A program made the position numbers and the translations under genes. Below are positions 1 through 51,463 of a stretch of 64,000 nucleotides of DNA, piece by piece. Origin of the DNA: Hemiscyllium ocellatum (Eukaryota); contig NC_083409.1 in the NCBI RefSeq assembly GCF_020745735.1, forward strand, positions 16,168,789 through 16,232,788. Reading direction: 5' to 3'. Under the pieces are notes generated by a model. It was not told the DNA's origin. It saw only the letters and a list, made by a program, of their open reading frames with translations, and made no database searches. Positions within the stretch are counted from its first letter, which is position 1, and every line of letters begins with the position of its first letter.

Positions 1-599
1 AAGATTTAAAAGGGACCTAAGGGACGTTTTCAATCAGAGGGTGTTAAATGTATGGAATGAGCTGCCAGAGGAGGTGGTGAAGGCTGGGACAATTACAACA
101 TTTAAAAGGCATGGGTATGTAAATAGAAAGATGTTAGAGGGATATGGGCCAAATGCTGGCAAGTGGGACTAGATTAATTTCGGATATCTGGTCAGCATGG
201 ACGAGTTGGACCAAAGGGTCTGATTCTGTGCTGTCCATCCCTCTGACTCTAATTGTATTTCAATCCAGCCCTTAACACATCAGGCTCTCCCAAAGACATT
301 TACAGACAGTTTTGTTTGACAAGCAGTCACTGTTGCAATGTCAGTAACGTGGCAGCCAGTTTCTGCACAGCAAGATCCCACTAGAAGCAATGAGATCAAA
401 GACCAATAATGATGTTGGCTCAACGATAAATATTGTCCTGAACTCAACCCAAAGAGAAAGGAATTTGGTTCAGTTGGATGGAAAATGAGAAAATGGAAGG
501 TAAAGGAGAAGGTAGGATTGCTGGTTAGTGATGGGATTGATTGTTACCAAAAATAAAAGAAAGGGATGGAATTTTTGAATATCAAAGGGATCATAAAAG

Positions 600-3370
600 T
601 GCAGGGAAAATCAACAATAGAACAAACTTAAAGAGTTTGTATCTAAATGCACAAAGCATTCTGAGTAAGGTTGACAAAGTGATGTCACAAATCCAGGTAA
701 ATTGAGTTTCCAAGGAATTTAAACTAAAGTTGAGGAGGGCTCAGGAAAGGTTATTCAAGTTTCTAGAAGATGTAAAAGGACAGAGAGTACAGAAAGGATC
801 AGGAATCGAACATAAAGCACAGCAGATAAGGGGACAATGATGGGAAGGAGGGCAATCAATGCAGGACTGAGGGTGTTGTACTTAAATGCACACAATATAC
901 ACAATGGGCTTGTAGTGCAGATTGAAACTGGCAGGTACGATGTTGTGGGTATCACAGGGACATGGCTGAAAGGGAATTCGGGCTGGGAACTAAATATCCA
1001 AGGATACATGTCCTATCAAAAGGACAGGCAGATGGGCAGAGGGGGAAGAGTTGCCTTGTTAGTGAGAAATGAAATTAAATCAATAGCAAGAAGTGATGTA
1101 GAGTTAGAAGGTGTAGAATCTGTGTGGGTAGAGCTGAGGAACTGCAATAAATAAAGAATCTGATGCAAGTTATGTCCAGGTCTCCAAGCAGTAATCAGGG
1201 TGTGGGGAAGGAAATCAATTAGGAGACAGAAAATGTCAGGGCAGACTTCAATGGATAGGTGGGCTGGGTAGTGTATCTCAAGGAAAGGATTTCATGGAAT
1301 GTCGATGATTTTGGAGCAGCTTGTGGTTGAGCCATTATGGAACTGGCAGGTCTGGATTCAGTGATGTGTATTGAGGCAAACTTGATTAGTGAGTTTAAGG
1401 TGAAAGTATCCCTGTGGATAAGTGACCATAATACGATAGAATTCCCCCTGTAGTTTGAGAGGGAGAAGCTGCAATCAGATTGAACAGTATTTCAGTTGAG
1501 TAAAGGTAACTCAATGTGGTGGAGAATAGTGGGAAGCCCGAGGATTAGGAAGCCTTTAAAAACCTGCAGGGGATAAAAGCATTAAGGGTGGAGAATGTGA
1601 AATGTGGGAGTTATCTAGCCAGTAATATAAAAGAAGATTGCAGGAGTTTTATCAGGTGTATAAAAAGGAAGAGGGAGTCAAAAATAGACTATGGATCACT
1701 GGAAAATGAGGCTGGAGAAAGAATAACAGGAAATGAAGGAATAGCAGAGGAATTGAATAGATATTTTGCCTCAGTCTGCACCATGGAAAACACCAGCAGT
1801 GTCCCAGTAATTCAAGACTGTCAGGGGTCGGAGGGGAGTGTAGTGGCCATCACTAAGGAGGAGGTACTGGGGAAGCTGAAAGGTCTGAATATGGATAACG
1901 CACCCAGACTGGATGAACTACACCCATGTGTTCTGAAGGAGATCACTGAGGAGATTGTGGAGGCATTGGTGATGATCTTTCAGTAATCAATGGAGTCAGG
2001 GTATGGAGGTGAGATGGGGACGGATTTGGTGGGGGCAAGGGACAGGAAAATGGCTCACATACCACCCCTGTTTCAGAAGGGAGGGAGGTAGAAGGTGGGA
2101 CATTGTAGGCCAGTTAGCCAGGACTCAGTTGTTGGTAAGGTTTTAGACTTCAATTTAAGGATGAAATTGCAGAGGATTGGAAGTGCAATGGCTTCATCAA
2201 GGAGACGTCATGCCTGGCAAATCTGTTAGAATTCTTTGAGGAGGCAATGAGCCAGTCAGACAAAGGAGAGTCCGAGGAAGTAATCTCTTTGGATTTCCAC
2301 AAGGCATTTGACATAAGATAAGCGCCCACAGTATTAGTGGCAATGTAGTGGCATGGATTGAAGACTGGCAGGTTGGCATAAAGCAGAGCATGAGGAACAA
2401 TGGCCGCTGGTGACTAGTAGAGTTCTGCAGTTGTCAATGTTATGGCCATAACTATTCACGTTATACATTAACAATCTGGATGAAGGAAGTGAAGACATTG
2501 TTGCTAAGTTTGCACGTGACATGAGATAGGTGGAGGGACAGGTAGTGTTGAGGAAGTGGGAAGGCTGTAAAAGCTCCTGGATAGGCTCGGAGAGTGGGCA
2601 AAGAAGTGGCAGACAGAATACAATGTGTGACAGTGTGAGGGTATGCACTTTGGGAGGAAGAAGAGATGCAAAGACTGTTTGCTAAATAAGGAAAGCTTTT
2701 GGAAATCTAAAGCACAAACCTCATTCAGGTTTCCCTTCAGTTTAACAGGCAGGTCCAGTTTGTGCTTGGGAAGGCAAATGAAATGTTCGCATCCATTTCA
2801 ATAGGGCCAGAATACAAGAGCAGAGATGTACTGCTGAGGCTGTGTAAGGCTCTGGTCAGACCACATTTTGAATATTGTGAGCAGATTTGGGACCCATATT
2901 CTAAGAAACAATGTGCTGGCATTGGAGGGGTTTACAAGAATGATCCTGGGGATGAAAGGCTTGTCATATGAGGCGTGGTTGAGGACACTGTGTCTGTACT
3001 CGATGGAGTTTAGAAGAATGAGGAGGGATCTGATTGAAATTTGCAGAATACTGATCGGCCTGGATAGAGTGGATGCAGGACAGACTCGGGAACCAAGGCA
3101 CAGCCTCAGAATGAAGGGCCGACCCTTTTGAGCTGAGGTGAGGAGGAATTTCTTCAGCCAGAAGGTGGTGAATCTGTGGAACTCATTGTTACAGAGGGCA
3201 GGGGAGGCCAAGTCACTAAGTGTATTTAAGACAGAGATAGATAGGTTCGTGATTGTGAAGGGGATCGAACGTTCCTGTGGAGTAGGCAGGAGAATGGGGG
3301 TGAGAAGCATATCTGCCAAGATCAAATGGCAGAGCAGATTCAATGGGCTGAATGGCTGATTTCTGCTCCT
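600..3370 (+). mobile_element. Decayed CR1-type LINE (APE endonuclease and RT fragments, 3' end)
   Basis: ORF fragments LYLNAHNI..VVGITGTW, RYFASVCTME, LCKALVRPHFEYC, RRNFFSQKVVNLWNSL; many stops and frameshifts. Confidence 0.85.
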
Positions 3371-6060
3371 ATTTCTTAAAGACTTCTGGAGAGTTTCCCC
3401 AAAACCCTGGAACACTGAACCCACTGGACTGTGAGCCCTGCTGGAGCTGTTTGTCATCAGAACTTTGCCAAGAGACAAACAAAGAGTGGAGAGAGTGTGC
3501 ATCCATGTGGGAATTTCAGAATGTTTCCCAGCTCCTGGAATACCATGAGTACAGGAAGTGAAGTCTGTGACAGCAGTTAGAGCTCTGGGTTTTGGAGCTT
3601 GAGCAGCAGCTGGTGTCAGTGCGGAGCGTCTGTGAGGCTGAGAGCTCCGTGGAGAGCACGTTTCTAGATGTGGTAACTCTGCAGCCTCAGAGTATGCAGG
3701 GAGAGAGGGAATGGGGGAGCAGCAGACAGTCCAAAAGGATCAGGCAGCTAGTATAGGAGTCCCCAGGCATCCCACTCTCCAACCAGGATACAGTTCAGAA
3801 TCCTGATGAGAATGATGGTTCATCTGGGGAGTGCAGCCAGAGCCAAGTCCCTGGCATCACTGGTGACTCAGCTATAATGGGGGGTTGCCGGGGCGGTGGG
3901 GGCGGGGGGGAGGTGAGGGGTGGTGGGGTGGTGGGGTGGTATTAGCAAGACTGGAAGAGTGATCGTAAAAGGAGATTTGAGACTGAGGGCATCGATAGGT
4001 GTTTCTGCAGCTGCAGATGGGAATCCAGGATGGTGTGTTGTCTCCCTGGTGCCAGAGTGAAGGATGTCACTGAGCGACTGCAGAGCACCCTGAGGGGAGA
4101 GGGGGAATAGGCAGCAGTCGTGGTCCACATCGGTCCCAGTGACAGAGGGAGAAAAGGGATGTAGTCCTGCAGTCAGAATTTAGGGAGCTCAGAAGGGAAA
4201 TAACATCAGGAACTCAAAAGTAGGAATCTTCAGGTTACTCCCAGTGCCCCAGGCAAGTGACAAGAGGAGCAGGAGGATAACACAAGTGACTGTGGGGCTG
4301 GGAAGAGGATCCAGGAGGGAGGGTTTTAGATTCTTGTGACATCGGGACTGGGTCTGGGGTAATGGGACCTGGATAGACCAGACAGCGTTGCTCCTGAACA
4401 GAGCTGGCACTGAGCTCCTTTGAGGTGATCTACTCGTGCTGTTGGAGAGGGTTTAAACTAACTTGGCAGAGCTGTGGGAGTCAGGAGGGACTGTCAGAGA
4501 GGAACACCAAGGTCCACAGAATCATCAGTGCAGTCAATAAGTCACCACCCAATGGGAAGGATTTAGAGGAATACATTTGCAAGGAATTTACAGTGACCTG
4601 CAAATATAATAGTCATTACAAATGGGGTTGGGGGGGGGGGGTGGAATTTCTTTAATTTCTGAATATAGACTGGGGTAGTAGCAGTGTGAAGGACAGAGGG
4701 GCCAGAGTCGTGAGAGTGTGTTCATGTGAATTTTCTCCAGCTGCATGTTTCCAGTCCAATGAGAAAGGAGGCTCTGCTAGATCTGGATCTTGGGAATGAG
4801 GAGGCCCAAGTGGATCACGTGTCAGTGAGAGGACACTTAAGGAAGAGTGATCATTGTATCACAAAGTTGAGGGTGACGGTAGAAAAGAACAAAGGCCTTT
4901 TCAGGGTAAAACATCTTCACTGGGGAAAATGCCAGCTTCTATAAGATATGGATGTCTCAGATCTGAATAAAGTTGGATCAAAGGTTGGCAGGAAAGTCCT
5001 GAAAAGAATAGTAGAGGATGTGGACCAGGTATATTCGAGATACATTTGAAGGAGGGCAAACAATTCCTGAACTTACTCAAGGGCAAAAGTGGTAGAATTA
5101 TGGTAAATAAGAAAAGGGCAAAAGAGTAACTAGAGAGAGAATAGGGCCCCATGAAGATGAACAATGTACCTCTGGGTGGATCCACAGGAAATGGTTTAGG
5201 TCTTAAATGAATATTCCAGGTCAGTATTTATCATGGAGAAAGACATGGAAATTTGGGAACTTGGGAAATAAATAGTAATGTCTTGACACAAGTCCACATT
5301 ATAGAAGAAGATTTCTTAAAGTGCAAGACGGTAGATAAATCTCCAGGACCTGATCAGGTGTATCCCAGGACATTGTGGAAAGCTAGGAAAGAGATTGCTG
5401 GATCCCTTGCTGAGGTATGTTTCTGATTGACAGCCATGAGTGAGGTTCTGGAGAACCAGAGAGGTTGGCTAATGTTAGCCATTATTTAAGAAAGGCTGTA
5501 AGGAAAAGCCAGGGAAATATAATCCAGTGAGCCTGAAGTCATTGCTGGGTAAGTTATTGGAGTGAGTTCTGAGGGACAGGATTTACATGCATTTGGACAA
5601 ACAATGCAGTTTTGTGCATGGTAATCATGTCTCACTAACGTGATTGAGATTGTTTGAAGAGAAGATTGATGTAGGCAAAACAGTACACACTGTCTATATG
5701 GACTTCAGCAAAGCATTTGACAAGGTTCCACATGATAGACTGATTAGTAAGATTAGGCCACATGGGATCCAGGGGGAGCTAGCCATTTGGGTAAAAAAAA
5801 ATGACTTCAAGATAGGAGACAGAGAGTGGTGGTAAGTGGTTGCTTTTCAGACTGGAGATCAGATGTCAGCTGTGTGCCACAAGGACTGGGCCCTTGGCTT
5901 TTTATCATTTAAATAAATGATTTGGATGTGAATATAGGAATTATGGCGAGTTTGTAAATGACACCAAAATTGGTGGTACAGTGGATAGTGAAGAAGCTTA
6001 TCTGAGAGTACAGTGGGACCTTGATCATTTGGGGAAATGGGCAGAAGTGTGGCAAATGGA

Positions 6061-6272
6061 CAAAAGTGCAGACTGCAGATGCTGGAAACCAGAGTTTAGA
6101 TCAGAGTGGTGCTGGAAAAGCACAGCATGTCAGGCAGCATCCGAGGAGCAGAAAAATCGACTTTTCGGCTAGAGGAATACTGATGAAGGGCTTTTGCCCG
6201 AAACATCGATTTTCCTGCTCCTTGGATGTTGCCTGACCTGCTGTGCTTTTCCAGCACCACTCTGATCTAAAC
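6061..6272. mobile_element. Penelope-derived fold-back element with hammerhead-like core (6180-6207) and 14-bp TSD
   Basis: About 75-bp inverted arms; CTGATGA-A-GGGC-TTTT-GCCC-GAAAC; flanked by GTGTGGCAAATGGA / GTGTGACAAATGGA; empty site in cluster 2 near 43435. Confidence 0.8.
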
Positions 6273-6385
6273 GTGTGACAAATGGAGTTCAATTTAGATA
6301 AATGTGAGATGTTGCATTTTGGAAAGTCAAACCAGGGCAGGAGTTATACTGTTAATGGTGGGGCCCTGTGGGGTGTTGCTCAACA

Positions 6386-6618
6386 NNNNNNNNNNNNNNN
6401 NNNNNNNNNNNNNNNNNNNNNNNNNNNNNNNNNNNNNNNNNNNNNNNNNNNNNNNNNNNNNNNNNNNNNNNNNNNNNNNNNNNNNNNNNNNNNNNNNNNN
6501 NNNNNNNNNNNNNNNNNNNNNNNNNNNNNNNNNNNNNNNNNNNNNNNNNNNNNNNNNNNNNNNNNNNNNNNNNNNNNNNNNNNNNNNNNNNNNNNNNNNN
6601 NNNNNNNNNNNNNNNNNN
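6386..6618. other. Assembly gap (233 N)
   Basis: Run of N. Confidence 0.99.
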
Positions 6619-7496
6619 GAAGTCACAGGGAGACAGGGAGATGAAGAAGGTGTTGGGTACACTTGCCTTTATTGGTCACTGCACTAAGTATCAGAGTTGG
6701 GACATCATTAACAGCTGTACAGGAAATTGGTGAGGCTATTTTGGGAATAACGTGGACAATTCTGATCATCCTGTGATAGGAAGGATGCTGTTAAACTTAA
6801 AATTCTGCAGAAAAGATTTACATGGATGTTGCCTGGAACTGGAGGGTTTGAACTGTCGGAAGAGGTTATTTTTCCTGCAGGATCGGAGACTGAGGGGTGG
6901 CCTTATAGATGTTTATAAAATCTTGACAGGCATGGACAGGGTGTATATCCCAGGTCTTTGCCTTGGGAAAGGGAATGTAAAACTAGAGGGTATAGGTTTA
7001 AGATGAGAGGCAAAAGATCCAAAAGGGACCTGAGGGGTAACTTGTCACACAGAGGGTGGTGCGTGTCCAGATCGAGCTGTCAGAGAAAGTGCTGGAGACG
7101 GATACAATTATAACATTTAAAAGATGTTTGGATGGGTACATGAATAGGAAGGGTTTAGAGGGATGTGGGCTAAATGCTGGCAAATGGGATGAGGTCAGTT
7201 TTGGATATCTAGTTAGCATGGAGGAGTTAGACTGAAAGATCTGTTTCCACGCTGTCTGACTCTGTGAACATTAGTGGCTGGAAGAGCTGAGATCTTTTAC
7301 CCTGAAGTGCCGGAGGCTGAGGAGTGACCTTACAGAGGTTTATAAAATCATGAGGGACATAAATAATGTGAATAATGCAGGAAGGAGGTGAATGTTTTGT
7401 AGAGCTGGTAAACATATGCACAAAGATCATTCCAGGGATGAGGAATATCAGTTCTGAAGATAGATTGGAGAATTTGGGACTGTCTTCTTTGGAGAA

Positions 7497-7698
7497 AGTT
7501 ACAGATCACACAACATCAGGTTATAGTCCAACAGGTTGATGTGGAAGCACTAGCTTTTGGAGCGCCGCTGACAATCATTTGATGAAGGAGGGATGCTCCG
7601 AAAGCTGGTGCTTCCAAATAAACCCCCTGTTGGACTATAACCTGGTGTTGTGTGATTTTTAACTTTGTCCACCCCAGTCCAACACCGGCACCTCCAAG
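7497..7698. mobile_element. Second-family Penelope-derived fold-back element with 11-bp TSD
   Basis: Inverted arms ATCACACAAC..GGTTATAGTCCAACAGG / CCTGTTGGACTATAACC..GTTGTGTGAT; degenerate core TTGATGA-A-GGAG..CTCC-GAAAGCT; TSD TCTTTGGAGAA; empty site at 42396-42406. Confidence 0.78.
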
Positions 7699-8148
7699 TC
7701 TTTGGAGAAGGCAGCGAGGAGAATTGTTCCAGAAATTCAAAATCAGGAGGGGCCTGGAACAGAGTAAATTGGGAGAAAATGATTCCACTTGTGAAAGGAT
7801 TGAGACTGTGAGGCCACAGATTGAAAGTAATTGGAAAAGTAAGAAAAGTGAGATGAGGGAAAACATTTTCAGCCAGTGGGTGGTTAAGGTGTGGAATGCA
7901 CTGCCTGAGAGTGTGGTGGAGGCAGCTTCAATTAAAACATTCCGAAGGGAATGAGACTGTTATCTGAAAAGGAACAATGTGCAGGGTGACAGGGAGAAGG
8001 CAGGAGAATGACACTCAGTCAATTGCTCATTCGGAGAGCTAGTCCAGACAGGATGGACGGAATGGCCTTCTTGTGCACTGTAACAATTCTGTGATTGTGT
8101 GATTGAGCAGAGTTAAAGCTGGGGGAGGTGGGAGCTCGGTGTCTCACT

Positions 8149-8178
8149 GTGCTGCTGCTGTTGCTGCTGCTGCTGCTG
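8149..8178 (+). repeat. (CTG)n trinucleotide repeat in the J-C intron (9 units with one TTG here; 6 units at 41936-41953; 10 pure units in cluster 3)
   Basis: Read directly. Confidence 0.9.
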
Positions 8179-8552
8179 AGGTCAGTGAGATCAGAGACTG
8201 GGACAGGGAGCCAGAGCTCACATCAAACTCTGCCCGTGTCCGTCACACTGAGACTGGCAGGAGGCTACTCACTGATTTCACTCCATGCTGCAGGAATGGG
8301 ACCACAGGCTGCAAATGGACAGAGCTCCTCCACACGGTGAGTAAAACTTACTGACTTATATCTTGCTTTTTTTAAAGAGGGCATGAAAGTAAAGAAATAC
8401 AGCTGGACACCCTGTTCGACACAGTGCTCCTCAATCAACCATTTCATTCACTGCAGCTTCCCACTAACACCTTCAACAAATCAGCAACTGTATTTTAGAA
8501 AGTGTGTTTCAGTATTGACAGGGTTAATAACAGAGGATTGAGGTTTACTTAC

Positions 8553-8587
8553 TCAGTCTGAGCTTGGTTCCTTTACCGAACGTAAGA
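8553..8587 (-). CDS. IGKJ: Ig kappa-type J segment, cluster 1 (LTFGKGTKLRL)
   Basis: FGxGT motif, 35 nt, donor CTGA|GTAAGT (phase 1); its C exon would lie just left of the window by analogy with cluster 2. Confidence 0.95.
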
Positions 8588-8626
8588 CACAGTGAGAGCT
8601 CCCAGTGCAGAGGCTGTACAAAAACC
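8588..8626 (-). other. J1 recombination signal sequence, 23-bp spacer
   Basis: Sense strand GGTTTTTGT + 23 bp + CACTGTG abutting J; perfect consensus. Confidence 0.97.
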
Positions 8627-9062
8627 TCAGCTCTCTGCTTTCCTCTTATCACTGTCAACCTCTCTCTGTCTCTGTGTGTCTATCGCTCACTCTCACCCTC
8701 TCCCTGCCCCTCTCTGTCTCTCCCTCATTCATGTGTCTTTCTCTCTCTGTCTCTCTGGGTTGTTTCCAGCTGGGCTCGGGAGGTTTGTGAAATTTATTTT
8801 TCGATGTTAAATCTTGAGGCAGCTCTTCACATGTGGCCATGGAGTGTAAGAGAGAAACTAGAGGCCTTCAGTGAGCGTTGAGACACCACAGGGACTGGAG
8901 TGTGCCGTGGACAGTGGAAATCCCAGTTTGGGGTAATTTGATCAGTTTCATTCAGATCTAACTGGATATATCACTTCAGGCAGTGAGACTGTGTGTTCAT
9001 TATTATACATTTTATGTAACTGTGCGATGTGTCAGTCCAGGAGGTGGTGTTGTGCGTGTTGA

Positions 9063-9090
9063 GGTTTTTGTATGGCTCTGTATCACTGTG
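9063..9090 (-). other. V1 recombination signal sequence, 12-bp spacer
   Basis: CACAGTG + ATACAGAGCCAT (12) + ACAAAAACC; perfect consensus. Confidence 0.97.
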
Positions 9091-9389
9091 TCGAGGGTAG
9101 CTGCTATGCTGCTGACAGTAATAGTCAGCGACATCCTCATTCTGAACGTTGCTGATTGTCAGGGTGAAACTGGTCCCTGATCCACTGCCGGTGAATCGAT
9201 CGGAGACTCCTGTGAATCGAGTTGCTGCATTGTAGATCAGGAGAGAGGGTTTCTGACCTTCTCGCTGCTGGTACCAAGCAAGGTAGCTGCTAATGCTTTG
9301 ACTGGCCTTACAGGTGATGGTTGCGGTCTGGCCCAGTCCCACTGACAGCACCGGGGGAGACTGGGTCATGGTGATGTCCCCACTGATAC
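9091..9389 (-). CDS. IGKV: Ig kappa-type V exon, cluster 1, open frame ([27 protein letters not shown]...WYQQ...[11 protein letters not shown])
   Basis: Acceptor CCCCTCAG|GT; conserved Cys, WYQQ, GSGSGT and DYYC motifs; intact ORF; followed directly by a canonical RSS. Confidence 0.96.
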
Positions 9390-9575
9390 CTGAGGGGTCA
9401 GAGAGAAACACAGTGAAGTCAGAACTGTCACACAAAGAGCCTGTCAAATGAGAGATTGTTGGAGACACTGAGCATTCCTCTGGTTTCAGCATTTTCCCTT
9501 CAATCACAAGTCAGTGGAATTGGAGTGAAATGGAGAGCAGCGAAAGATTCAAGGTGGAAGGAGAGAGATTTGTAC

Positions 9576-9624
9576 CTGCGACACAGAATGCCAGGGGCCA
9601 GATCAGCTGGATGTGTGAAATCAT
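9576..9624 (-). CDS. IGKV: Ig kappa-type light chain cluster 1, leader exon (MISHIQLIWPLAFCVA+G)
   Basis: ATG at 9624 in CACCATG context; 49-nt hydrophobic exon ending GCAG|GTACAA (phase 1); 186-bp intron to the V exon. Confidence 0.93.
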
Positions 9625-9684
9625 GGTGTGTGCTCCTGTCCCTGTGCCTGGTTCCTGATAAACTCTCCCTTCACTGGGCTCTGC

Positions 9685-9781
9685 TTTATAAAGCTGCAGC
9701 CTGTGAGAGTCTGACTGGGTGTTCCTCAGTATGTAAATGGCATCAGGCAGAGAGAGCCACGTCAGCCCCACACACTTCCTC
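9685..9781 (-). promoter_or_regulatory. V1 promoter: PU-box GAGGAAGTG (9773-9781), TGACGTG (9758-9764), octamer variant ATTTACAT (9731-9738), TATA-like TTTATAAA (9685-9692)
   Basis: Motifs read directly; same order and spacing upstream of all three leaders; function inferred from known Ig promoter architecture. Confidence 0.7.
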
Positions 9782-10819
9782 TTCTCTCTCTCTCTCTCTC
9801 TCTGTCTCAGAGTCATTGATGTGAACAACATTGAATGAGGCCATTTGGCCCATTGTGTCTGTGCTGGTAAACAGCGGTCTGATGACACTAATCCCATCCT
9901 CCAGCTCTTGGCCCGTTACCCTGGAGGTTACAGCAACACAAGGGAATATCTAAACACTGCTCCAATGTCACGAGAGTTTGTGACTCAACCAGCCTTTCAG
10001 GCAGTGAGTTCCAGACTCCCACCACCCTCTGGGTGAAAACATTTCTTCTCAACTCTCCTCTCACTCTCCAATTCTCCAACTCGCCTGGCCATGGACTCAC
10101 TCGTGTTCAGAACGATGAGAGGGGATCTGATTGAAACATATAAAATTGTAACAGGGCTGGGCAGGGAGGAGGTTTCCCCTGGTTGGGGAGTCTGGAACCA
10201 GGGGACACAGGCTCAGGGGGATACAGGGTAGACCATTTAGGACTGAGATGAGGAAACATTTCTTCACTCAGAGGGTGGTCAACCTGTGGAATTCGCTACC
10301 ACTGAAGGCTGTGGAGGACAAGGAACTGAATATATTCAAGAAAACAAGAGAGATAATTGTTTTGCATTTTAACAACTTGAAGAGAATGGGGAGAACGCAG
10401 GAATATGGCTTTGAGAGAGAGGATCAGCCATAGATCATAGAATGCCTACAGTGTGGAAACAGGCCATTTGGCCCGACAAGCCCACACTGACCCTCGAAGA
10501 AATTATGACATTCAAAAATTGATACAGCCATGATCATACTGAATGACAGAGCAGACTCAAAGGGCCGAATGGCCTACTGCTGCTCCAAGTTTCTACGTGT
10601 CCATGTCTGTGTTACCTTCAATCTCTGTACCAGGTTTTTAAGTCTTTTACTCATGTAAAAAGTGCCATCCTACCTACCCTGTCACTGTTCTGAATAATCT
10701 TATCCCTCTCTATCAGGTCCCTGTTAAGCCTTCACTGCTCAAAGCTCACATTCAGGCAGCATCCTGGGAAATCTCCCCTGTACCCTCTCAGGTACAATCA
10801 CATTCTTCCCAGAGTGTGG

Positions 10820-11580
10820 TGACCAGGACCTGTCCCTCTCTCTCTCTGACTCACATCTGCCATTTCTTTCTCTCTACCTCTACCTCTCTCTCCCACTGTT
10901 AATCTCTTTCATGTTCTCTCTCTCTCTCTCTCTCTCCCTCTCTCTCTCTCTCTCACACACACACTCTGTCTCATAGCCACTCTCTCCAACTCACTGATGC
11001 TTTCTCACTCCATCTTATCATCTGTTTCTCCATCTCTCACTGTCTCTGTTACTCGCTCCCTCTCTCACTTCAATTAAAAGCCTCCAATTGTTATCTGTCA
11101 CTCTCTATTCCTCCCTCTTTCTCTCTCCTTCCCTCTCGACCTCCCAATTTACAGTCTCTCTCCCTCTCTCTCTCTGTCATTATAAATCTACCCATACTCA
11201 TCTCTCTCTCTCACACTCAACTCTACCCTCCCTCTCAACTCTCTTCATGCTTTGTCTCACACCCATCCTGTCTCTCTCTCTCTCTCTCTCTCCTTGTCTC
11301 TTTCTCTCTCTCCATCCCTCTCAGTCACACTGTCTCACATCTTGTTTCACTCTCTATCCCTCAGCCTCACCATTTCTACCTCCCTCTAACTCTCTCGGTC
11401 CCCTCACATATCTTACACCGTATCAGATGCTCGTCCCTCTATCTCTCTCTCTCACTTTCTTTCTTTCTTTCTCTCTCTCTCACACTCACACACACACACA
11501 CACACGCACGCCCACACTCACTATTTTTCCCTCCATCTCTCTCTCTGCCTCACTGCTCTCTCTTTCTGACAGTGTCCTGG
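10820..11580 (+). repeat. Long CT/CA low-complexity tract (homologues at 38930-39370 and 60380-61140)
   Basis: (CT)n and (CA)n runs in a pyrimidine-rich stretch. Confidence 0.9.
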
Positions 11581-12399
11581 GTGGTGACAGTTGAATGCAG
11601 GATAAATCTCCCTCTGCTCTGCCCCACTAATGGATGTTAACCCTTGACCCCTGTCTTCTCCTGGAGTAAGGCCCTATTTCCACGTTGACCAGGGTTTGGC
11701 CTCTCTCAGGAAGATGGACAGATTCTGGTCAAATGAAGGGCAGTTCTGTGCTGTTCTGTACTGTTGGCCTATTCTCACTGGGGACTGATTTGGACACAAA
11801 GCTCATTCCATGAAGGCCCAGCAGAGAGAGGAGATCCTCAGGCCATCAGTGTGAGTTGGAGGCACAGGACAAGCTCTGACCCACTGACCCATCCTGTCCA
11901 TTCACAACATGTTCCAATCCCTTCCCCTCTCCTTCCCCTTCCATGGTCAGTCTTTTCTGAAATGGAGTGGTCCCTTCCCTGTCTCACACCAAGGAGGAGA
12001 TGGACAGATATTTAATGGGTAATGGGTTAAAGGATGATGGAGAGTGGGCAGGAAAGTGGAGTTGAGTCTGAGATGGGATCAGCCATGATTGTATTAAATG
12101 GTGGAGTGGGCTCGAGGGGCTGAATTGCCTGCTCCTGCTCCTAGTTCTTATGTTCCTCCACCCTCTCCCCCATCCCTCTTACTGCAACTTTGTGAACATT
12201 CTTGGAATGTTTGGACATTGAAGGAGTTATGTGAATTCAAGATTTGTGTGGATTTAATGTGGGGACAGAATTGCACACGGGCTGTGATAGCTCCTGCGGT
12301 TGAATATCCTGCTGGCAGGCTTCCGCCTTCCATATACAGAATGGGGAAGTGGGGGAGGTGGGAATGTACTGCTGGGGTACACGGCACTGTCCTCTAACA

Positions 12400-14040
12400 A
12401 TGTGGTTGACTCTCTAGTGCCCTCTGAAATGGCCGCGCAAGGCTCTCAGTTTTATCAATTGTGACAATGTTTCAACAAAGAAATGAGACCGGACGGACCA
12501 CAGGCATCGATCTAGACACCGAAAAGACAATGACAGAAACAGTCCTGTCTACCCTGCTCTGTCCTCCTTACTGACATTTGGGAGTTAGTGCCAAATTCAG
12601 GAAAGCTGTCTCACAGACTAGTCAAGCAACAGCCTGACACTGTCATACTCACAGAACCATATAGACAATGTCCCAGACACTACCATCACTGTCCCTGCAT
12701 GTGTCCTGTCCCACCAGAAAGGCAGACCCAGCAGAGCTGATGACACAGTGGTCTACAGCCAGAAGGGAGTTACCCTGGGAAATCTCAAAGCTGGCTCTGG
12801 ACCTCATGACACCAGGTTAAACATGGGCGAGGAAACCTCCTGGTGATTACAAGATATCTTGCTCCCTCGGCTGATGAATCAGTCTCTCCTGGGTGTTGAA
12901 CAACATTTGGAGGAAGCACTGAGGGTGATGACAGCAGAGAGTGTACTCTGGGTGGGGGGTTTCAATGTCCACCACTGAGAGTGGCTCGGCAGCAGCATTA
13001 CTGATCGAGCTGGTTGGTTCCTCATGGGTGTAGCTGAGGGACTGGCTCTGCAGCTGGAACCAAAAGATGGAAAAAGATGCTTGACCCCATCCTCACCAAT
13101 CTTGTGGCTGTAGATGCATCTGTCCTTGACAGTGTTGGTAAGAGTGACCATCACACAGTCCTTGTGGAAACAAAGTCTGACCTTCACATTGAGAATCCCC
13201 TCCATTGTGTTGTGTGGTACTATCACCGTACTAAATAGGACAGACTCCAAACAGATATTGCAACTCAAGGCAAACTCGTAAATGGGGATGATTGCCAAAG
13301 ATTGCATAATGCTCAGCACTCTTCTCAACTCCTCAGATACTGAAGCAGTCCACGTGCAAATGCAACAATATCTGGACAATATCCAGGTTTTGTCTGAGAA
13401 GTGACATTTCCCATTGGTGCCATGCAAATGCCAGCCAATCACCATCACCAATAAGAGACAAACTTAACATCGCCCCTTGACAATCAATGCTATTACCATC
13501 ACTGAATCCCCACGATCAACATTCTTGAGGTGCCATTGACCAGAAACACAACTGGATTCACCAAAGAAACACAGTGGTTACAAGAGCAAGTTAGAGGCTA
13601 GGAATACTGCATCCAGTAATTCAACTCCTGATCCCCCAAAGCCTGTCAACCAAGTCAGGAGTGTGAGCAAATACTCCCCACTTGCCTGGACAGGTGCAGC
13701 TCCAACAACATTCACAGAGTCATACAGCACAGGAACAAACCCTTAAGCCAAACTTCTACATGCTGACCAGGTTTTCTGAAGTGAACTCATCTTATTTGCC
13801 TGCATTTCACACATATCCCTTGAAACCTTTCCTATCTATGTCGATTGTATCCTATGTCTTTCTTATCCACTCAAAAAGCTTGATACCATCCAGAGCAAAG
13901 CAAACTCCTTGATTGGCATCGCATTCTCAAAGCATCCAAACTCACCGTCACTGACGCTCCATAGCAGCAGTGTGTATTATCGAAAAGATGCACTGCAGAA
14001 ATTCATCACCGATCTTCAGATAGCACCTTCCAAACCCATG
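12400..14040 (+). mobile_element. Decayed APE-type non-LTR retrotransposon of a different family (L2-group-like); copy at 61960-63600, related fragment at 35110-35620
   Basis: APE-like remnants (..VKQQPDTVILTE.., GGFNVHH) broken by frameshifts. Confidence 0.6.
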
Positions 14041-14240
14041 GACAAAAATAGAAATTGCAGGAAAAGCTCAGCAGGTCTGGCAGCATCTTGGAGAGAAATC
14101 AGAATTAACATTTCAGGTTGAGCATGAAATATTAACTCTGATTTCTCTTCACAGATGCTGCCAGACCTGCTGAGCTTTTCCAGCACTTTCTATTTTTGTC
14201 TCAGATTTACAGCATCTGCAGTTCTTTTGGTTTCCCTCCA
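14041..14240. mobile_element. Third fold-back element (copy at 63603-63800)
   Basis: About 73-bp inverted arms GACAAAAATAGAAA..GCAGCATCT / AGATGCTGC..TTTCTATTTTTGTC; no hammerhead core left in the centre. Confidence 0.65.
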
Positions 14241-14789
14241 AACCCACGTTCACTTCCATTTAGAACAAGAGCAGCAGATACATGGGAACACTGTGAGCTG
14301 CAAGTTCCCCTCGAAAAAGCTTAGCATCCGGACTTGGAAATACGTCGCTGATCCCTCAGCCTTGCTGGGTTAAAATGCTGGCATTGTGGGTCAACTTACA
14401 GCTTGTGGACGATAACAATTCAAGATGGCAGCTTCCCACCACCTTCTCCAGGGCAACTAGGGACAGGGTAAAAAATGTTGGCCCAGCCGGTGAAGCCCAC
14501 TTCCCACAAGTGAATATGCAAAACCAAATGAAGTGTCCCTCAGGAGGGGAGAGGGAATGTTCAGGATCCTGAACTCCATTTCCCAGCCCAGGCAGTTTGT
14601 CTCCCAATGAATGAATGAGATGCCAATTTGAAGCCCAGGTTCAGGGCAGTCTCACTCTGTGGACATGAGGTCTATAAGAGAGAATTGGAGATTGAGCTGT
14701 AAAGGAAAGATTTGCTGGGTTATGGGGAGAGAGAGGGGAGCAGTGGGATTCACTGGGTCATTCAAAGGCATGATGGGCTGAATGGCCTC

Positions 14790-15050
14790 CTCCTGTGCTG
14801 TCAGATTCCAGGGAGTGCAGACAGTTTACAGTTTTCTCCCATCTCAGTAACAAACACCCAGCTGCTCCAAGCTCTTTCTTTCACTTCCTCTCTTGATGAA
14901 GTTTCAACCTTGTGCTCTGACAGTCTTTGCATTTATTTTTTACACTGGGGCTTTCTGCTGTGGTCAGAATCTCTAATAATAAGTGTTCAATCAGTGACAA
15001 TCACAGCAGCTAAGAGCAGTCAGGACTGAGGAGCCAGGCTCACTGGGAAA
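14790..15050. promoter_or_regulatory. Candidate B-cell enhancer block, left arm: EICE GAGGAAGTGAAA (minus, 14879-14890), E-box CAGCTG (14859-14864), RUNX TGTGGT (14959-14964)
   Basis: Block not recognisable as a repeat, conserved in inverted form at 34660-34920 with all three motifs retained. Confidence 0.55.
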
Positions 15051-15734
15051 CACATTGGGAAGATCAAAGCCATCCTCTTCAGCTCCTGGTACAAGCTCCA
15101 TCCCTCTCCCTGAGCACTGTCTGCTGCTCAACCAGACTCTTTACAACTTTGGCCTCATCTTTGGGGCTGATTTGAGGCCCAAATCCTCCACATCACAATT
15201 ATCAGCCACTGAAAATCTCAACCATGTTTTTGTGACCATTCCAATGATATCCAGGCCCACATCACAGCCACTGACTTCCGTAAACATCAGCTCATCCCAA
15301 ACTCTGCTGTCTGTTTTCAAACTCACACCAAGTCCACCCCATACCCCTGCCCAAACCTCCCCACCCCACCATGACCACCACAATCCTCACTGACTGACAT
15401 AAGCTCCTGGTCCAGCAACACCTCGATTTTTAAATTCTCATCCTTGTTCTCAATCTGCTCCCTGTTCTTCCACCCTCCCTATCTCTGTGACCTCCTCCAA
15501 GCTGCCTCACTCAGTGTGATCAATAATCTTGGATATATGGCTCTCTGTTTCTTCATCCAAATCATTGAGAAATATCGTGAAAAGCTGAGGTCCCAGCACA
15601 GATCCCTGGGAATACCACTACTCACATCTGTCTCATTGGAACACACGCACATTATCCTTCCTCTCTGTCTCCTAGACAGACCCATTCCTGACCCAAGGTA
15701 AATGCATTTCTCAAATTCCATCCAATTCCATGAT

Positions 15735-15870
15735 TTGGAGATGCCGGTGTTGGACTGTTATGTAAATGTTAAAAATCACACAACACCAGGTTCTAATGCA
15801 ACAGGTTTGTTTGGAAGTGTTAGCGTTTGGAGCACTGCTCCTTCATCAGATGGTTGTGGAGTGTAAGATC
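15735..15870 (-). mobile_element. Penelope-derived short element (second family) with a broken hammerhead core
   Basis: Minus strand CTGATGA-A-GGAGC-AGT-GCTCC-AAAC (G of GAAA missing); shares arms with 7497-7698. Confidence 0.6.
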
Positions 15871-16289
15871 TGAACCAATGCTTCTTTTGTGGAACATACT
15901 TAAATGTTTTTTGGAAGTCCCGATAGACAATAGCCATCGACATTCCCTTATATCCCAAACTAATGAGCTCCTAACAAAGTGTAATCCGGTTATTTAAAGA
16001 TGTCTGAACCTTTGTCAATCCAGGCTGTCTCTCTCGGACCAGTTCATATTTGTCCGTTATTCTGCCTCTAAAAACAGACTCAATCACTTCCTGACAACAG
16101 ACATTCAATGGAGATGTTCATTGTAATTGAGGCTCGTAAACAGCTAGCACTGACACGAGGAGCTGAACAGCCTCCTCCTGTGCTGGCATCTTCTCTGTCT
16201 CCTTGACGGAAATATTTTACAGATTAAAAACTAAAGACCAGCAGCAAATTTTAAAATATAAATTAAAATCTCCTCAAATAATTTCCACA

Positions 16290-34020: not shown

Positions 34021-34659
34021 AGTGATAGAAAAGTATTTGTCTTTGGTTAGGAATTAGTTTGGAGGTAGGAGACAGAGAAGAGGGATAATGCTGACCAATA
34101 AACAAGATGTGAATAGTGGTGTCCCCAGGGATTTGTGCAGGGGCCTCAGTATTTCACGATATTTCTCAATGACTTGGATGAAGGAATAGAGAGCCAATTA
34201 TCCAAGATTGCTGACCACACGGAGTGAGGCAGCTTGGAGGAGGTTACAGAGATAGGGAGAGTGGAGGGCAGAGAGGGATTTGAGAACAAGGATGAGAATT
34301 TGAAAATCGAGGTGTTGCTCGACCAGGAGCCAATATAGGCACGGGGTGCAGGGGGTTGTGGGAACGGGACTTGGTGCAAGTTTGGATACGGGCTGCAGAA
34401 TTTTGGATGAGCTGAAGGATACGGAGGGCAGTGGCTGTGATGTGCATCAGCCATTGGAATGGTCATGTTTGGAGCCCCATAAACATGGCTGAGATTTTCA
34501 GTGGCTGATCTTTGTGATATGGAAGATATGGGGCTTAGATCATTCTCAAACATGAGACCCAGTTTGTAAAGAGTCTGGTTGAGCAGCAGACAGTGCTCAG
34601 GGAGAGGGATGGAGTTTATACCAGGATCTGAAGAGGATGGCTTTGATCTTCCCAATATG

Positions 34660-34920
34660 TTTCACAGTGAGCCTGGCTCCTCAGTCCTGACTGCTCTTAG
34701 CTGCTGTGATTGTCACTGATTAGACACTTATTATTAGAGATTCTGACCACAGCAGAAAGCCCCAGTGTAAAAAATAACTGCAAAGGCTGTCAGATCGCAA
34801 GGTTGAAACTTCACCAAAAGAGGAAGTGAAAGAAGGAGCTCAGAGCAGCTGGGTGTTTGTTACTGAGACGGGAGAAAACTGTGAACTGTCTGCACTCCCT
34901 GGAATCTGACAGCACAGGAG
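34660..34920. promoter_or_regulatory. Candidate B-cell enhancer block, right arm: EICE GAGGAAGTGAAA (34820-34831), CAGCTG (34846-34851), ACCACA (34746-34751)
   Basis: Reverse-complement homologue of 14790-15050. Confidence 0.55.
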
Positions 34921-36911
34921 GCTGGTTCTAGGATTTATTTTTTGCAGAAACAGCACAGTTTTGGAAAAGGTGTCAGTCACTCTCTCACAAACACACACGC
35001 CTGCACTCGGAGATCAGAAACAGAATCCAGCAGCAGCTCTGTCTCCAAGCTGTGAAACCTGCACAGAATTGTTCCCTCATTCAGTTTATAACTGGCAGGA
35101 TAGACCAAGCAGGGAAGGCAACACAGTGGTGTGTACAGTCGGAAGGGAGTTGCCCTGAGAGTCCTCACCATTAACTATGGAACCCATGAAGCCTCATGAC
35201 AGCAGGTCAAACATGGGGAAGGAAACCTCCTGCTGATTACCACATAGCACCGCCCTCCCCTCCAACCTCAACTGAGCAGTCAGTCCTCCTCCATGTTGAA
35301 CAACACTTGGAGGAAGCACTGAGGATGGGAATGATGCAGGATATACCCTGAGTAAGGGACTTCAAAGTCCACCATCAAAAGCTGCTCAGAAGCATCACTA
35401 CTGAGCAAACTGGTCACGCTCCACCTGATTCAGCTGCGAGACTGGACCTGGGGCAGGTGGTGAGGGAACCAACAAGAGGGAAAAACATACTCACTATCAC
35501 CTTCACCAATCTGCCTGCTGCTGGTGTATCTGTCCATGACAGTATCAGTAAGAGTGACCACAGCACAGACCGTGTGGAGACAAAATCCTGTCTTCCCTTT
35601 GAGATTATCTTACATTCTGTTGGGCAAGAGATATGGAATGTCAGAAAGAACTTTGATTTTAGCAGCAATTGTCAAAGTCTTGGAAATTAGTGCCCATTCA
35701 GGTGAGACAGGTGAAGAAACTCAGTGATTGCAATGGCAGATTGGATGGGCTCTTGATGGAAATAAACCTGCAAGGCCCTGGGGGTCGAGTAGGGGAGGGG
35801 GTGGGACTGACTGGATTGCTCCATGAAATGACAGCATTTCCCTGACAGGCTGAATGTTCTCCCCCTGTGCTGGAAATAGGTCTCACTCAATGAGGGGTTC
35901 ACAATTAGAGAGTCTGGATGCAGTAAATACAGGACAAATTGTTTCTCCAGGCAGGAGGGTCAGTAACCAGAGGGCACACATTTCAGAAAGGGTCTGAAGT
36001 ACAAGAGAGAAGATAGGAACATTTTTTATCCAGCGAGTTCATGATGACTGTCTGCAAGGTGAGTGGAAGTGGATTCAACAGCAACTTTCAAAAGGGCATT
36101 TGGAGAAATAGCTGAAAAGGAAATAATTGCAGGGTTATACAGGAAGGGCTGGGGAAATGGGACTCATTGGACTCATTTGACTAACAGTCGCAATTAACCC
36201 AGTGACCTCTGTCTGTGCTGTTTTAGAGCTTACACATACTTAGACTCACCTTTACACAAAGACTGGGAGAAACAGACAACCCAGTTTACAGAAGAGTGTT
36301 TTCTCAAGGAAAACTCTCTTGAACCAACTCAGGGAACAGGCCAGACTAGATTTACTGATGAGGAATAATTCAGCAAATCAATGGCAAGGGAACAGTGAAC
36401 CAAAAGTGATGGGATTGAACAGTATATTCAATAGCACAACCATTCAGAGGGGGAGGGATCAAGGGCAGGAAGTCCGAGAGCATGCTGTAGGGGTCTGAAG
36501 GCTCTGCTGTCAATGGTGGGATGGAGCAAGCAGCAATGGGCAGGAGACCAGAGACAGAAGATGGAAGGGGGAGAGAGGGAATGTGAGTCTGCAGCAGGAC
36601 ACAGACGGAGGGAGGCCATGGTGGCAATTGGCTGGCAGTGAGGTCAGGGGTCATTCTGGAATGAGAGATGGATAAGACAGGGAAGGGCCCACTCCATATC
36701 AGACAAATTGGAGTTTATGGAATATGGCTTTAGGAAGCTGGGAGAGGACATTAGAATCATAGAGTTAGGGGGCAGGACGAGCAGGAATTAGGGTTTCTGT
36801 GGTCAAGGGGGCGAGGTAGTGCAGAGACAATGTTGTTGAGATTGAAATAAGAGGCATACGTGATGGAGAGGATGTGGGGTTTGCAGCTCAGGTGCTGGAT
36901 AGTCCTGAGGG

Positions 36912-40485: not shown

Positions 40486-40534
40486 ATGATTTCACACATC
40501 CAGTTAATCTGGCCCCTGGCATTCTGTATCGCAG
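40486..40534 (+). CDS. IGKV: Ig kappa-type cluster 2 leader exon (MISHIQLIWPLAFCIA+G)
   Basis: ATG at 40486, 49 nt, GCAG|GTACAA donor, 186-bp intron as in cluster 1. Confidence 0.92.
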
Positions 40535-40720
40535 GTACAAATCTCTCTCCTTCCACCTTGAATCTTTAGCTGCTCTCCACTTGACTCCAATTCCACTGAC
40601 TTGTGATTGAAGGGAAAATGCTGAAACCAGAGGAATGCTCAGTGTCTCCAACAATCTCTCATTTGACCGGCTCTTTCTGTGACAGTTCTGACTTCACTGT
40701 GTTTCTCTCTGACCCCTCAG

Positions 40721-41015
40721 GTATCAGTGGGGACATCATCATGACCCAGTCTCCCCGGTGCTGTCAGTGGGACTGGGCCAGACTGCAACCACCACCTGTA
40801 TGACCAGTCAAAGCATTAGCAGCAACCTTGCTTGGTACCAGCAGCGAGAAGGTCAGAAACCCTCTCTCCTGATCTATGATGCAGCAACTCGATTCACAGG
40901 AGTCTCCGATCGATTCACCGGCAGTGGATCAGGGACCAGTTTCACCCTGACAATCAGCAACGTTCAGAATGAGGATGTCGCTGACTATTACTGTCAGCAG
41001 TATAGCAGCAGCCTT
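40721..41015 (+). pseudogene. IGKV: Ig kappa-type V exon, cluster 2, frameshifted as assembled
   Basis: TCTCCCCGG has 4 C where V1 has 5, a -1 shift in FR1 near 40753; the rest reads [14 protein letters not shown]...[10 protein letters not shown]; its RSS heptamer is also mutated. Confidence 0.8.
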
Positions 41016-41043
41016 TACAGTGATACAGAGCCATACAAAAACC
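41016..41043 (+). other. V2 12-RSS with mutated heptamer (TACAGTG)
   Basis: TACAGTG + ATACAGAGCCAT + ACAAAAACC; first heptamer base is T instead of C. Confidence 0.9.
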
Positions 41044-49500: not shown

Positions 49501-49584
49501 GGGATGAACTGGAAGTCTTTCAGTTGTGCTTTTCCTAATCACCCTGTTCAGAAACAAACTTCTTGCTTTCACACTCAACTAAAA

Positions 49585-49925
49585 ATAAGATAAAGGAGGT
49601 GATGATTTAATGGTACTATTGCTGAGCTGTTCATCCAGAGATCCAGATTAATGTTCTGGGGGCCAGGGTTAGAATCCTGTGCAGCAGATGGTGGAATGTG
49701 AATTCAATAAAAAATCTGCAATTAAGTGTCGAATGATGACCATGAAACAATTGTTGATTGTCAGGAAAAAGCCATCTGATTCCCTGATGTCCTTTTAGGG
49801 AAGGAAACTGCCATCCTTACCATGTGACTCCAGACCCACAGCAATGTGGTTGACTCTAAACTGCCCTCTGGGTGATTAGGGATGGGCAATAAATGCTGAT
49901 CCTATCAGTGACACTCACATCCCAA
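49585..49925 (+). mobile_element. Probable SINE-like element just upstream of the C exon
   Basis: B-box-like GGTTAGAATCC; 3' part CAATGTGGTTGACTCT..CTGCCCTCTG..AGGGATGGGCAATAAATGCTG resembles 12400-12430 and 14450-14520. Confidence 0.45.
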
Positions 49926-51450: not shown

Positions 51451-51463
51451 NNNNNNNNNNNNN
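51451..51463. other. Assembly gap (13 N) at the junction to the duplicated segment
   Basis: Run of N. Confidence 0.99.

What the first reader, a model, noticed from the sequence alone, without database searches (positions are those of the whole stretch)
14790..15050. Candidate shark Ig kappa enhancer: perfect ETS-IRF composite element with E-box and RUNX site, kept in both inverted arms
Seen: a ~260-bp block I cannot assign to a repeat family, about 5.3 kb upstream of leader 1. It recurs inverted at 34660-34920, about 5.7 kb upstream of leader 2, although the DNA between it and each V has different insertions. Both copies keep GAGGAAGTGAAA, a CAGCTG about 15 bp away and a TGTGGT, in the same orientation relative to V. 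Established: GGAAnnGAAA is the PU.1/IRF4-IRF8 composite element of mammalian Ig kappa 3' and lambda enhancers, and E2A and RUNX act with it. Inference: this is an upstream per-cluster B-cell enhancer, a position unlike the mammalian downstream enhancers.
Basis: partly seen in the sequence, partly recalled or inferred. Interest (0 to 1): 0.75.

Follow-up and report, generated by a model that had tools for sequence, protein, structure and literature searches.

The report
Conserved enhancer-like module upstream of shark kappa genes
A 350-base non-coding block about 5 kb upstream of shark antibody kappa light-chain genes keeps binding sites typical of bird and mammal light-chain enhancers intact across gene copies and in a second shark species, so it is probably a switch for these genes, though nobody has measured any activity.

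Summary
The block is real and occurs twice, inverted (14789-15138 and 34572-34921). It lies 5.26 and 5.66 kb upstream of two head-to-head kappa V leaders.

Within the window alone the case is weak:
- GGAANNGAAA occurs at the chance rate.
- The two copies are 95% alike, the same as an old LINE fragment in the same arms.

The case improved when I fetched kappa clusters of Chiloscyllium punctatum. The block lies 6.5 kb (L001) and 4.8 kb (L002) upstream of the leader, in V orientation.
- L001: the core is 94.5% identical, against 79-89% for its flanks.
- L002: this is a diverged, germline-joined cluster. Five sites fixed beforehand (E-box, ETS-IRF element, kB-like, RUNX, MEF2) keep 43 of 44 bases, against 76% for the other core bases (p about 0.0002-0.0006).
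- The longest invariant runs coincide with those sites, and their spacing is almost fixed.

Contigs of sequencing runs show it is not a high-copy repeat.

Best reading: a selectively maintained, cluster-linked regulatory module, most likely a B-cell enhancer. Activity is untested.

The scan noted the same element earlier at three other kappa loci of this genome. I found no paper describing it.

The parts
14789..15138 (-). Conserved core of the block, copy A (belongs to cluster 1, whose V is on the minus strand)
   Evidence: 94.9% identical to copy B with no gaps. 94.5% identical to C. punctatum L001 3268-3615.
14842..14981 (-). Minimal module that stays conserved even in the diverged cluster L002
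   Evidence: 85.4% identical to L002a, against 77.6% for the whole core. Contains all four invariant runs of 10 bases or more shared by copies A, B, L001 and L002a.
14879..14890 (-). ETS-IRF composite element GAGGAAGTGAAA
   Evidence: The 14-base run AGAGGAAGTGAAAG is invariant in A, B, L001 and L002a.
14859..14864 (.). E-box CAGCTG
   Evidence: Invariant in all five copies.
14942..14967 (-). 26-base invariant run holding the RUNX site (ACCACA, 14959-14964) and a kB-like site (9 of 10 bases to GGGRNWYYCC, 14947-14956)
   Evidence: Identical in A, B, L001 and L002a. No chance match in 100 shuffles.
14973..14982 (.). Perfect MEF2 consensus (YTAWWWWTAR), CTAATAATAA
   Evidence: the consensus occurs at only 4 places in 64 kb, two of them in the two block copies. 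One mismatch in each of L002a and L002b.
14842..14855 (-). Unassigned invariant 14-mer GTTTGTTACTGAGA next to the E-box
34572..34921 (+). Conserved core, copy B (cluster 2). ETS-IRF element 34820-34831, E-box 34846-34851, kB-like 34754-34763, RUNX 34746-34751, MEF2 34728-34737.
15139..15711 (.). Less conserved distal continuation of the shared unit (partner 34027-34571). 15454-15674 resembles other places in the window.
   Evidence: 72-88% identity with 56 gap columns. Weak matches to other window places.
14700..14812 (+). 3' tail of an old high-copy LINE abutting the core. Copy B is broken off inside it at 34921.
   Evidence: Window matches. Very high contig depth at 14651-14850. The junction is also present in L001, L002 and in contigs of two other organisms.
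9576..9624 (-). Leader exon of V1 (ATG 9622-9624)
9091..9389 (-). V1 exon. Intact 12-spacer RSS at 9063-9090 (CACAGTG, 12 nt, ACAAAAACC).
   Evidence: Kappa-like hits at E 1e-75.
40486..41025 (+). Leader, intron, V2 exon and RSS of cluster 2 (probable pseudogene)
   Evidence: 1-nt deletion in FR1, and the heptamer reads TACAGTG.

Best explanation
The block is a selectively maintained cis-regulatory module that belongs to each kappa V-J-C cluster. It is most likely a B-lineage enhancer.

Its working part is about 140 bp (14842-14981). In V orientation it carries, in order:
- a MEF2 site
- a RUNX site
- a kB-like site
- about 60 bp further on, an ETS-IRF composite element
- an E-box
- an unassigned conserved 14-mer

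Inferred mechanism: PU.1 or Spi-B binds GGAA and recruits IRF4 or IRF8 to the adjacent GAAA. E-proteins, RUNX and MEF2 factors occupy the neighbouring sites. The complex loops to the V promoter about 5 kb downstream and drives cluster-autonomous transcription. It may also open the cluster for rearrangement or mark it for AID.

Shown here: presence, linkage, orientation, near-fixed spacing, and site-specific conservation. Inferred: which factors bind, and any activity.
For: 1. Linkage. The block lies 5.26, 5.66, 6.48 and 4.80 kb upstream of the leader ATG, always in V orientation. This holds in two window clusters and in two C. punctatum clusters, L001 and L002.

2. L001. The core is 94.5% identical, against 79-89% for the other alignable intergenic pieces and 83% for the V exon. 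That is on a par with the promoter at 92%.

3. L002a. Its V is only 81.5% alike and is germline-joined to J. The five sites were defined before this locus was fetched. They keep 43/44 bases, against 220/288 elsewhere in the core. Fisher p = 0.0002; 12 of 20000 random placements do as well.

4. The longest invariant runs in copies A, B, L001 and L002a are exactly the MEF2 site, the RUNX + kB-like stretch (26 bp), the ETS-IRF element (14 bp) and one more 14-mer.

5. The spacing between the 26-mer and the ETS-IRF element is 77, 77, 77 and 75 bp.

6. A cluster of ETS-IRF + E-box + MEF2 + RUNX sites within 150 bp arose in 2 of 300 simulated 64-kb sequences.

7. E-box, NF-kB, MEF2 and PU.1-IRF4 sites are the conserved, functionally required set of the chicken, human and mouse Ig lambda enhancers (PMC3972084).

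8. It is not a high-copy repeat.

9. None of the 18 differences between copies A and B falls in the 44 motif bases (p = 0.09).
Against: - No accessibility, binding or reporter data exist.
- GGAANNGAAA occurs at the chance rate in the window.
- Parts of the motif set (MEF2, kB-like) were chosen after looking at the sequence, so the simulation p-value is optimistic.
- The kB-like site matches only 9 of 10 bases.
- Between the two window arms the core (95%) is no better kept than an old LINE fragment at 3117-3378 (94.7%) and less well than the promoter/leader region (97%).
- V2 beside copy B looks dead.
- The inverted copy L002b shows no enrichment at the sites: 35/44 against 80%.
- Averaged over the whole core, L002a (77.6%) is no better kept than other alignable intergenic pieces (75-78%).
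- Contigs of presumed RNA runs cover the block only at background level.
- The site-specific test rests on one diverged copy.
Confidence: 0.6

Rival explanations
1. Neutral passenger. The block is only a surviving piece of the ancestral duplicated cluster unit, possibly partly derived from a mobile element. The motif cluster arose by chance. Similarity between copies reflects recent duplication or gene conversion, not function.
For: - The two window copies are no more alike than an old LINE fragment in the same arms.
- The ETS-IRF motif occurs at the chance rate.
- L002b decays at the sites as fast as elsewhere.
- V2 is a probable pseudogene, yet copy B is well kept.
- Adjacent DNA (15139-15711 and the LINE tail) travels with the block in all copies.
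- From memory only: short peptide patterns in 15040-15530 recall the C-terminal part of a fish retrotransposon reverse transcriptase. One such pattern was found by regex.
Against: - The sites keep 43/44 bases in L002a, against 76% around them (p 0.0002-0.0006).
- The invariant runs coincide with sites predicted beforehand.
- Spacing is near-invariant.
- Gene conversion would homogenise whole tracts, not 6-26-bp islands.
- No tool confirmed a mobile-element origin.
Confidence: 0.2
2. The block is regulatory, but not a classical transcriptional enhancer. It could be mainly an element that targets AID-driven hypermutation (DIVAC-like), a promoter of upstream sterile transcripts, or a boundary between head-to-head clusters.
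For: - The same motif set makes Ig enhancers work as hypermutation-targeting elements with little effect on transcription (PMC3972084).
- The block is retained upstream of a germline-joined VJ cluster that needs no rearrangement.
- Both in the window and in L002, two inverted copies face each other between head-to-head clusters.
Against: - No transcript evidence above background at the block.
- No boundary-type motif was looked for or seen.
- The site set is that of activating B-cell enhancers.
- These roles are not exclusive of enhancer function.
Confidence: 0.15
3. The block is a member of an interspersed repeat family, or encodes an RNA or a peptide.
For: - ORFs of 105-169 aa overlap it.
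- It is flanked by repeats.
Against: - No other copy in 64 kb.
- Low summed contig depth, against up to 7x10^5 on true repeats.
- No Rfam family.
- Folding is no better than shuffles, z +0.9 and +1.2.
- No Pfam match, and no relative among 1.8 billion proteins.
- The ORFs are not kept between the copies.
Confidence: 0.03

Closest known systems
Ig lambda enhancers of chicken, human and mouse (cIgLambdaE, hIgLambdaE, E-lambda 2-4 / 3-1)
   Same: Compact module with an E-box, a MEF2 site, a PU.1-IRF composite element and a kB-type site. The sites are conserved while the intervening sequence drifts (PMC3972084). The shark core GGAAGTGAAA equals the mouse lambda-B site as I recall it (memory, not checked here).
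   Different: The shark block lies 4.8-6.5 kb upstream of V, one per small V-J-C cluster, not downstream of C. Its kB-like site is imperfect. It adds a RUNX site. The order of the sites differs. Homology to the tetrapod enhancers was not tested, and no activity has been shown.
Mouse Ig kappa 3' enhancer PU.1 / NF-EM5 (IRF4) composite site
   Same: GGAA, a two-base spacer and GAAA on one strand, next to an E-box, in a kappa-type locus (established knowledge; listed among conserved 3' kappa enhancer sites in PMC3972084).
   Different: The position is 3' of C-kappa in one large translocon locus. Here it is 5' of V in each cluster, including a germline-joined one.
DIVAC (hypermutation-targeting) elements of Ig loci
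   Same: The same factor-site set, E-box, MEF2, Ets/IRF and NF-kB, is what such elements require (PMC3972084). Sharks do hypermutate light chains.
   Different: It is a functional class defined by an assay that has not been run on this sequence.
Teleost Ig light-chain cluster enhancers (for example Atlantic cod; from memory, paper not held in the library)
   Same: Per-cluster regulatory elements in fishes with a cluster-type light-chain organisation.
   Different: As I recall, they were reported downstream of C or between clusters and were defined by reporter assays.

Membership tests
ETS-IRF composite element (EICE) | GGAA core, two-base spacer, GAAA on the same strand | tested here: met
   GGAAGTGAAA at 14879-14888 (minus strand) and 34822-34831 (plus strand). 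Identical in L001 and L002a.
ETS-IRF composite element (EICE) | Cooperative binding of PU.1 or Spi-B with IRF4 or IRF8 | not testable with these tools
   Needs EMSA or ChIP with the shark factors.
Vertebrate Ig light-chain enhancers | Clustered E-box, MEF2 and PU.1-IRF sites | tested here: met
   All three lie within 125 bp in both window copies and in L001. The reference set comes from PMC3972084.
Vertebrate Ig light-chain enhancers | NF-kB site | tested here: inconclusive
   Only a 9-of-10 match (GGGGCTTTCT, 14947-14956), although it is invariant in four copies.
Vertebrate Ig light-chain enhancers | Sites conserved between species while the spacers drift | tested here: met
   L002a keeps 43/44 site bases against 76% of the others, and the invariant runs coincide with the sites. 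Not seen in L002b.
Vertebrate Ig light-chain enhancers | Location downstream of the constant exon | tested here: not met
   The block is 4.8-6.5 kb upstream of the leader in four clusters.
Vertebrate Ig light-chain enhancers | B-cell-specific accessibility and enhancer activity | not testable with these tools
   No chromatin data. Contigs of presumed RNA runs cover the block at background level only.
Vertebrate Ig light-chain enhancers | Sequence homology to tetrapod lambda or kappa enhancers | not tested
Interspersed repeat / mobile element | Many dispersed copies | tested here: not met
   No further copy in the window. Summed contig depth is 1.1-1.4 thousand, against 2.2-2.9 thousand at the leader/promoter and up to 733 thousand on repeats. 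The tool warns that depth is not a copy number.
Interspersed repeat / mobile element | Recognisable element-encoded protein remnants | tested here: not met
   Nothing from Pfam, the word-indexed search or phmmer against 1.8 billion proteins. BLASTP against the window's own LINE ORFs gave nothing.
Structured non-coding RNA | Match to a known family, or folding better than shuffles | tested here: not met
   No Rfam hit at E up to 1. z-scores are +1.22 and +0.88.

The most novel reading that the evidence does not exclude
The module is the cartilaginous-fish counterpart of the lambda-type light-chain enhancer. That would make the E-box / MEF2 / PU.1-IRF (plus RUNX, kB-like) grammar an enhancer logic already present in the common ancestor of jawed vertebrates. 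In sharks it is placed 5' of V and copied with every cluster. It would give each cluster its own B-cell switch and perhaps its own AID-targeting signal, including germline-joined clusters that never rearrange.
Probability: 0.3. Interest if true: 0.8.

Novelty: new member of a known kind. Interest (0 to 1): 0.62.

Why it matters
I found no Ig enhancer of a cartilaginous fish described in the papers I could search. How hundreds of small, dispersed shark Ig clusters are each switched on, excluded and hypermutated is an open question.

This is a defined 140-350-bp element with mutable sites, present once per cluster. It also occurs before a germline-joined cluster. That makes several questions directly testable with reporter, DT40 and ATAC experiments:
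- cluster-autonomous regulation
- the age of the PU.1-IRF / E2A / MEF2 enhancer grammar
- the origin of hypermutation targeting

Tried and rejected
**Checks on the block itself that gave nothing**
- Rfam scan of 14500-15900: nothing.
- RNA folding of both strands: no better than shuffles.
- Pfam on the ORFs over the block: only sub-threshold noise.

**Mobile-element origin of 15040-15530**
- From memory I suspected that 15040-15530 is a decayed C-terminal part of a fish or shark retrotransposon reverse transcriptase.
- The only support is short regex patterns, such as IQNSAAR in copy B.
- Two word-indexed protein searches, one phmmer search of 1.8 billion proteins and BLASTP against the window's own LINE ORFs all found nothing.
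- I leave it as an unconfirmed lead.

**Searches for further copies**
- Exact-product look-ups of the block's ORFs: not on record.
- DNA of kappa loci from chromosome-level assemblies could not be delivered. These were C. punctatum (new assembly), Scyliorhinus torazame, Cetorhinus maximus, Heterodontus francisci and Hemiscyllium ocellatum. Conservation beyond the bamboo/epaulette shark family is therefore untested.
- L003 and L004 end before the block's expected position.

**Run and contig evidence with no power**
- Presumed RNA runs of two other organisms hold a few of the block's words. I first suspected transcription. Laid out, their contigs cover the block no more than other intergenic DNA.
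- Divergence of those organisms' contigs at the block (8-11%) is not lower than in other non-repeat flanks (4-9%). That comparison has no power.

**Findings index**
- A sequence search of the scan's findings returned nothing.

Full report
**1. What the window holds**

It carries Ig kappa-type light-chain clusters.
- **V1** is on the minus strand. Leader exon 9576-9624, V exon 9091-9389, intact 12-spacer RSS, J at about 8545-8585.
- **V2** is on the plus strand. Leader ATG about 40486, V exon to about 41015, J at about 41534.
- **A third V** lies at about 58660-58970. It sits in a 97-99.6% direct copy of 1806-14438, which runs off the window end.
- The V1 reading frame finds 'immunoglobulin kappa light chain-like' proteins of Chiloscyllium, Hemiscyllium, Scyliorhinus, Cetorhinus and Heterodontus, with E down to 1e-75.
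- Clusters 1 and 2 are the arms of an old inverted duplication, 196-15711 against 48813-34027. The arms are 89% identical over about 9.6 kb of alignable columns.
- Earlier scan notes name the genome as epaulette shark. I did not verify that.

**2. The observation**

- Homology starts sharply at 14789 / 34921 and runs to 15711 / 34027.
- It falls into two parts. The core, 14789-15138, has 18 mismatches and no gap (94.9%). The distal part, 15139-15711, is 72-88% identical with 56 gap columns.
- The ETS-IRF element, the CAGCTG E-box 14 bp away and the TGTGGT site are in both copies, in the same orientation relative to V.
- I added two more sites before any outside sequence was fetched. One is a perfect MEF2 consensus at 14973-14982; this consensus occurs at only four places in the 64 kb. 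The other is a 9-of-10 kB-like site at 14947-14956.
- The DNA between block and V is not homologous between the arms over 2.8-3.6 kb.
- The first ~24 bases of the block are the end of a high-copy LINE tail.

**3. The window alone gives a weak case**

- GGAANNGAAA occurs 3 times against 4.2 expected.
- Among non-overlapping 350-bp windows of the arm alignment the core ranks third, behind promoter/leader (97.4%) and V exon (95.1%). But a clear LINE fragment in the J-C intron, 3117-3378, is 94.7% identical. The core's identity is therefore within the neutral range of these arms.
- None of the 18 differences hits the 44 motif bases (p = 0.09).
- V2 has a 1-nt deletion in FR1 and a TACAGTG heptamer, so copy B may sit beside a dead gene.
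- The four-motif cluster arose in 2 of 300 simulated sequences. Part of that motif set was chosen after seeing the sequence.

**4. It is not a repeat, an RNA or a gene**

- No other copy exists in the window.
- Contigs of a run of the source organism give a summed depth of 1.1-1.4 thousand over 14851-15450. The leader/promoter gives 2.2-2.9 thousand, the least-covered intergenic bins give 0.35-0.64 thousand, and repeats give up to 733 thousand. Between 7 and 15 distinct contigs cover single block positions, similar to the leader. The tool warns that depth is no copy number, so I use this only qualitatively: the block is low-copy and of the same order as the V leaders.
- There is no Rfam family, no folding signal, no Pfam match and no protein relative.
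- Presumed RNA runs cover the block only at the level of other intergenic DNA.

**5. Other clusters**

Through the kappa protein hits I fetched C. punctatum contigs.

*L001*
- The core (3268-3615) is 94.5% identical to copy A.
- Other parts of the unit compare as follows: flanks 79-89%, V exon 83%, promoter 92%, leader-V intron 98%.
- Two insertions of about 250 and 283 bp sit at the two edges of the core and leave it whole.

*L002*
- This is a diverged cluster (V exon 81.5% identical) whose V and J are already joined in the germline.
- It has the block 4.8 kb upstream in V orientation (L002a).
- It has a second, inverted copy 3.4 kb further up (L002b), the same head-to-head picture as in the window.

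**6. The decisive test**

In L002a the five predefined sites keep 43 of 44 bases, while the other core bases keep 220 of 288. Fisher p = 0.0002, and only 12 of 20000 random placements of same-sized segments do as well.

The longest runs invariant in A, B, L001 and L002a are:
- the MEF2 site
- a 26-mer with the RUNX and kB-like sites
- the 14-mer around the ETS-IRF element
- an unassigned 14-mer beside the E-box

The distance from the 26-mer to the ETS-IRF element is 77, 77, 77 and 75 bp.

This is the footprint pattern of a factor-binding module under purifying selection. Gene conversion would not produce it.

L002b shows no such enrichment (35/44 against 80%). That fits a relaxed copy, but it also limits the evidence to one diverged copy.

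**7. Interpretation**

- The site set matches the conserved, mutation-sensitive set of the chicken, human and mouse lambda enhancers: E-box, NF-kB, MEF2 and PU.1-IRF4 (PMC3972084).
- I therefore read the block as a cluster-linked B-cell enhancer-type module (confidence 0.6).
- Its retention before a germline-joined cluster argues that its main role is not only to open DNA for rearrangement.
- Neutral passenger (0.2) and other regulatory roles (0.15) remain open.

**8. Novelty**

- Searches of the held literature found no described Ig enhancer of a cartilaginous fish. The library is incomplete.
- The scan itself has already noted the same element at three other kappa loci of this genome. Those are unchecked notes.
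- The tests in sections 5 and 6 are my own and agree with them.

Noticed in passing
window 40750-40757 and about 41015-41025: V2 has a 1-nt deletion in a C run of FR1, and its RSS heptamer reads TACAGTG instead of CACAGTG. It is probably a pseudogene, unless the deletion is an assembly error.
   Followed up: partly
window 1806-14438 vs 51464-64000; N run 51451-51463: Cluster 3 is a 97-99.6% direct copy of cluster 1 and begins right after a 13-N gap. No constant exon lies on its strand. This is either a very recent duplication or a haplotype/assembly duplicate. Its RSS spacer is 11 nt, with one base missing near 58639.
   Followed up: no
window about 50080-50400 (+): This is the only kappa constant exon in the window, 8.6 kb downstream of J2. 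The constant exon of cluster 1 must lie beyond the left end of the window.
   Followed up: no
window 9390-9575 and partners: The leader-V intron is the best-kept part of the unit: 97-98% between arms and to L001, and 87% to L002. That is higher than the V exon (83-96%). It may carry regulatory or splicing information.
   Followed up: no
L002 10313-10570: The C. punctatum cluster on BEZZ01000502.1 has V and J fused in the germline (…YYCMQDYSVPQTLSFGKGTKLQL…), with the constant exon 3.6 kb downstream.
   Followed up: partly
window 7878-8227 and 49579-49588: A J-C intron stretch just downstream of J is 94.3% identical between the arms. A perfect MEF2 consensus, CTAAAAATAA, lies about 500 bp upstream of the constant exon. 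Both are possible further control elements.
   Followed up: no
window 14051-14250; L001 3016-3268: This is an extremely high-copy element (summed depth 733 thousand). The consensus of its loose ends contains a CTGAGGAAGGGTCAC...GAAA stretch. A similar stretch forms the insertion at the distal edge of the core in L001. It recalls the hammerhead-bearing mobile elements noted by first readers elsewhere in this window.
   Followed up: no
window 9730-9740 (-): The V1 promoter has ATTTACAT, one base off the octamer ATTTGCAT, upstream of a TATAAA box. No perfect octamer lies in any V promoter of the window.
   Followed up: no
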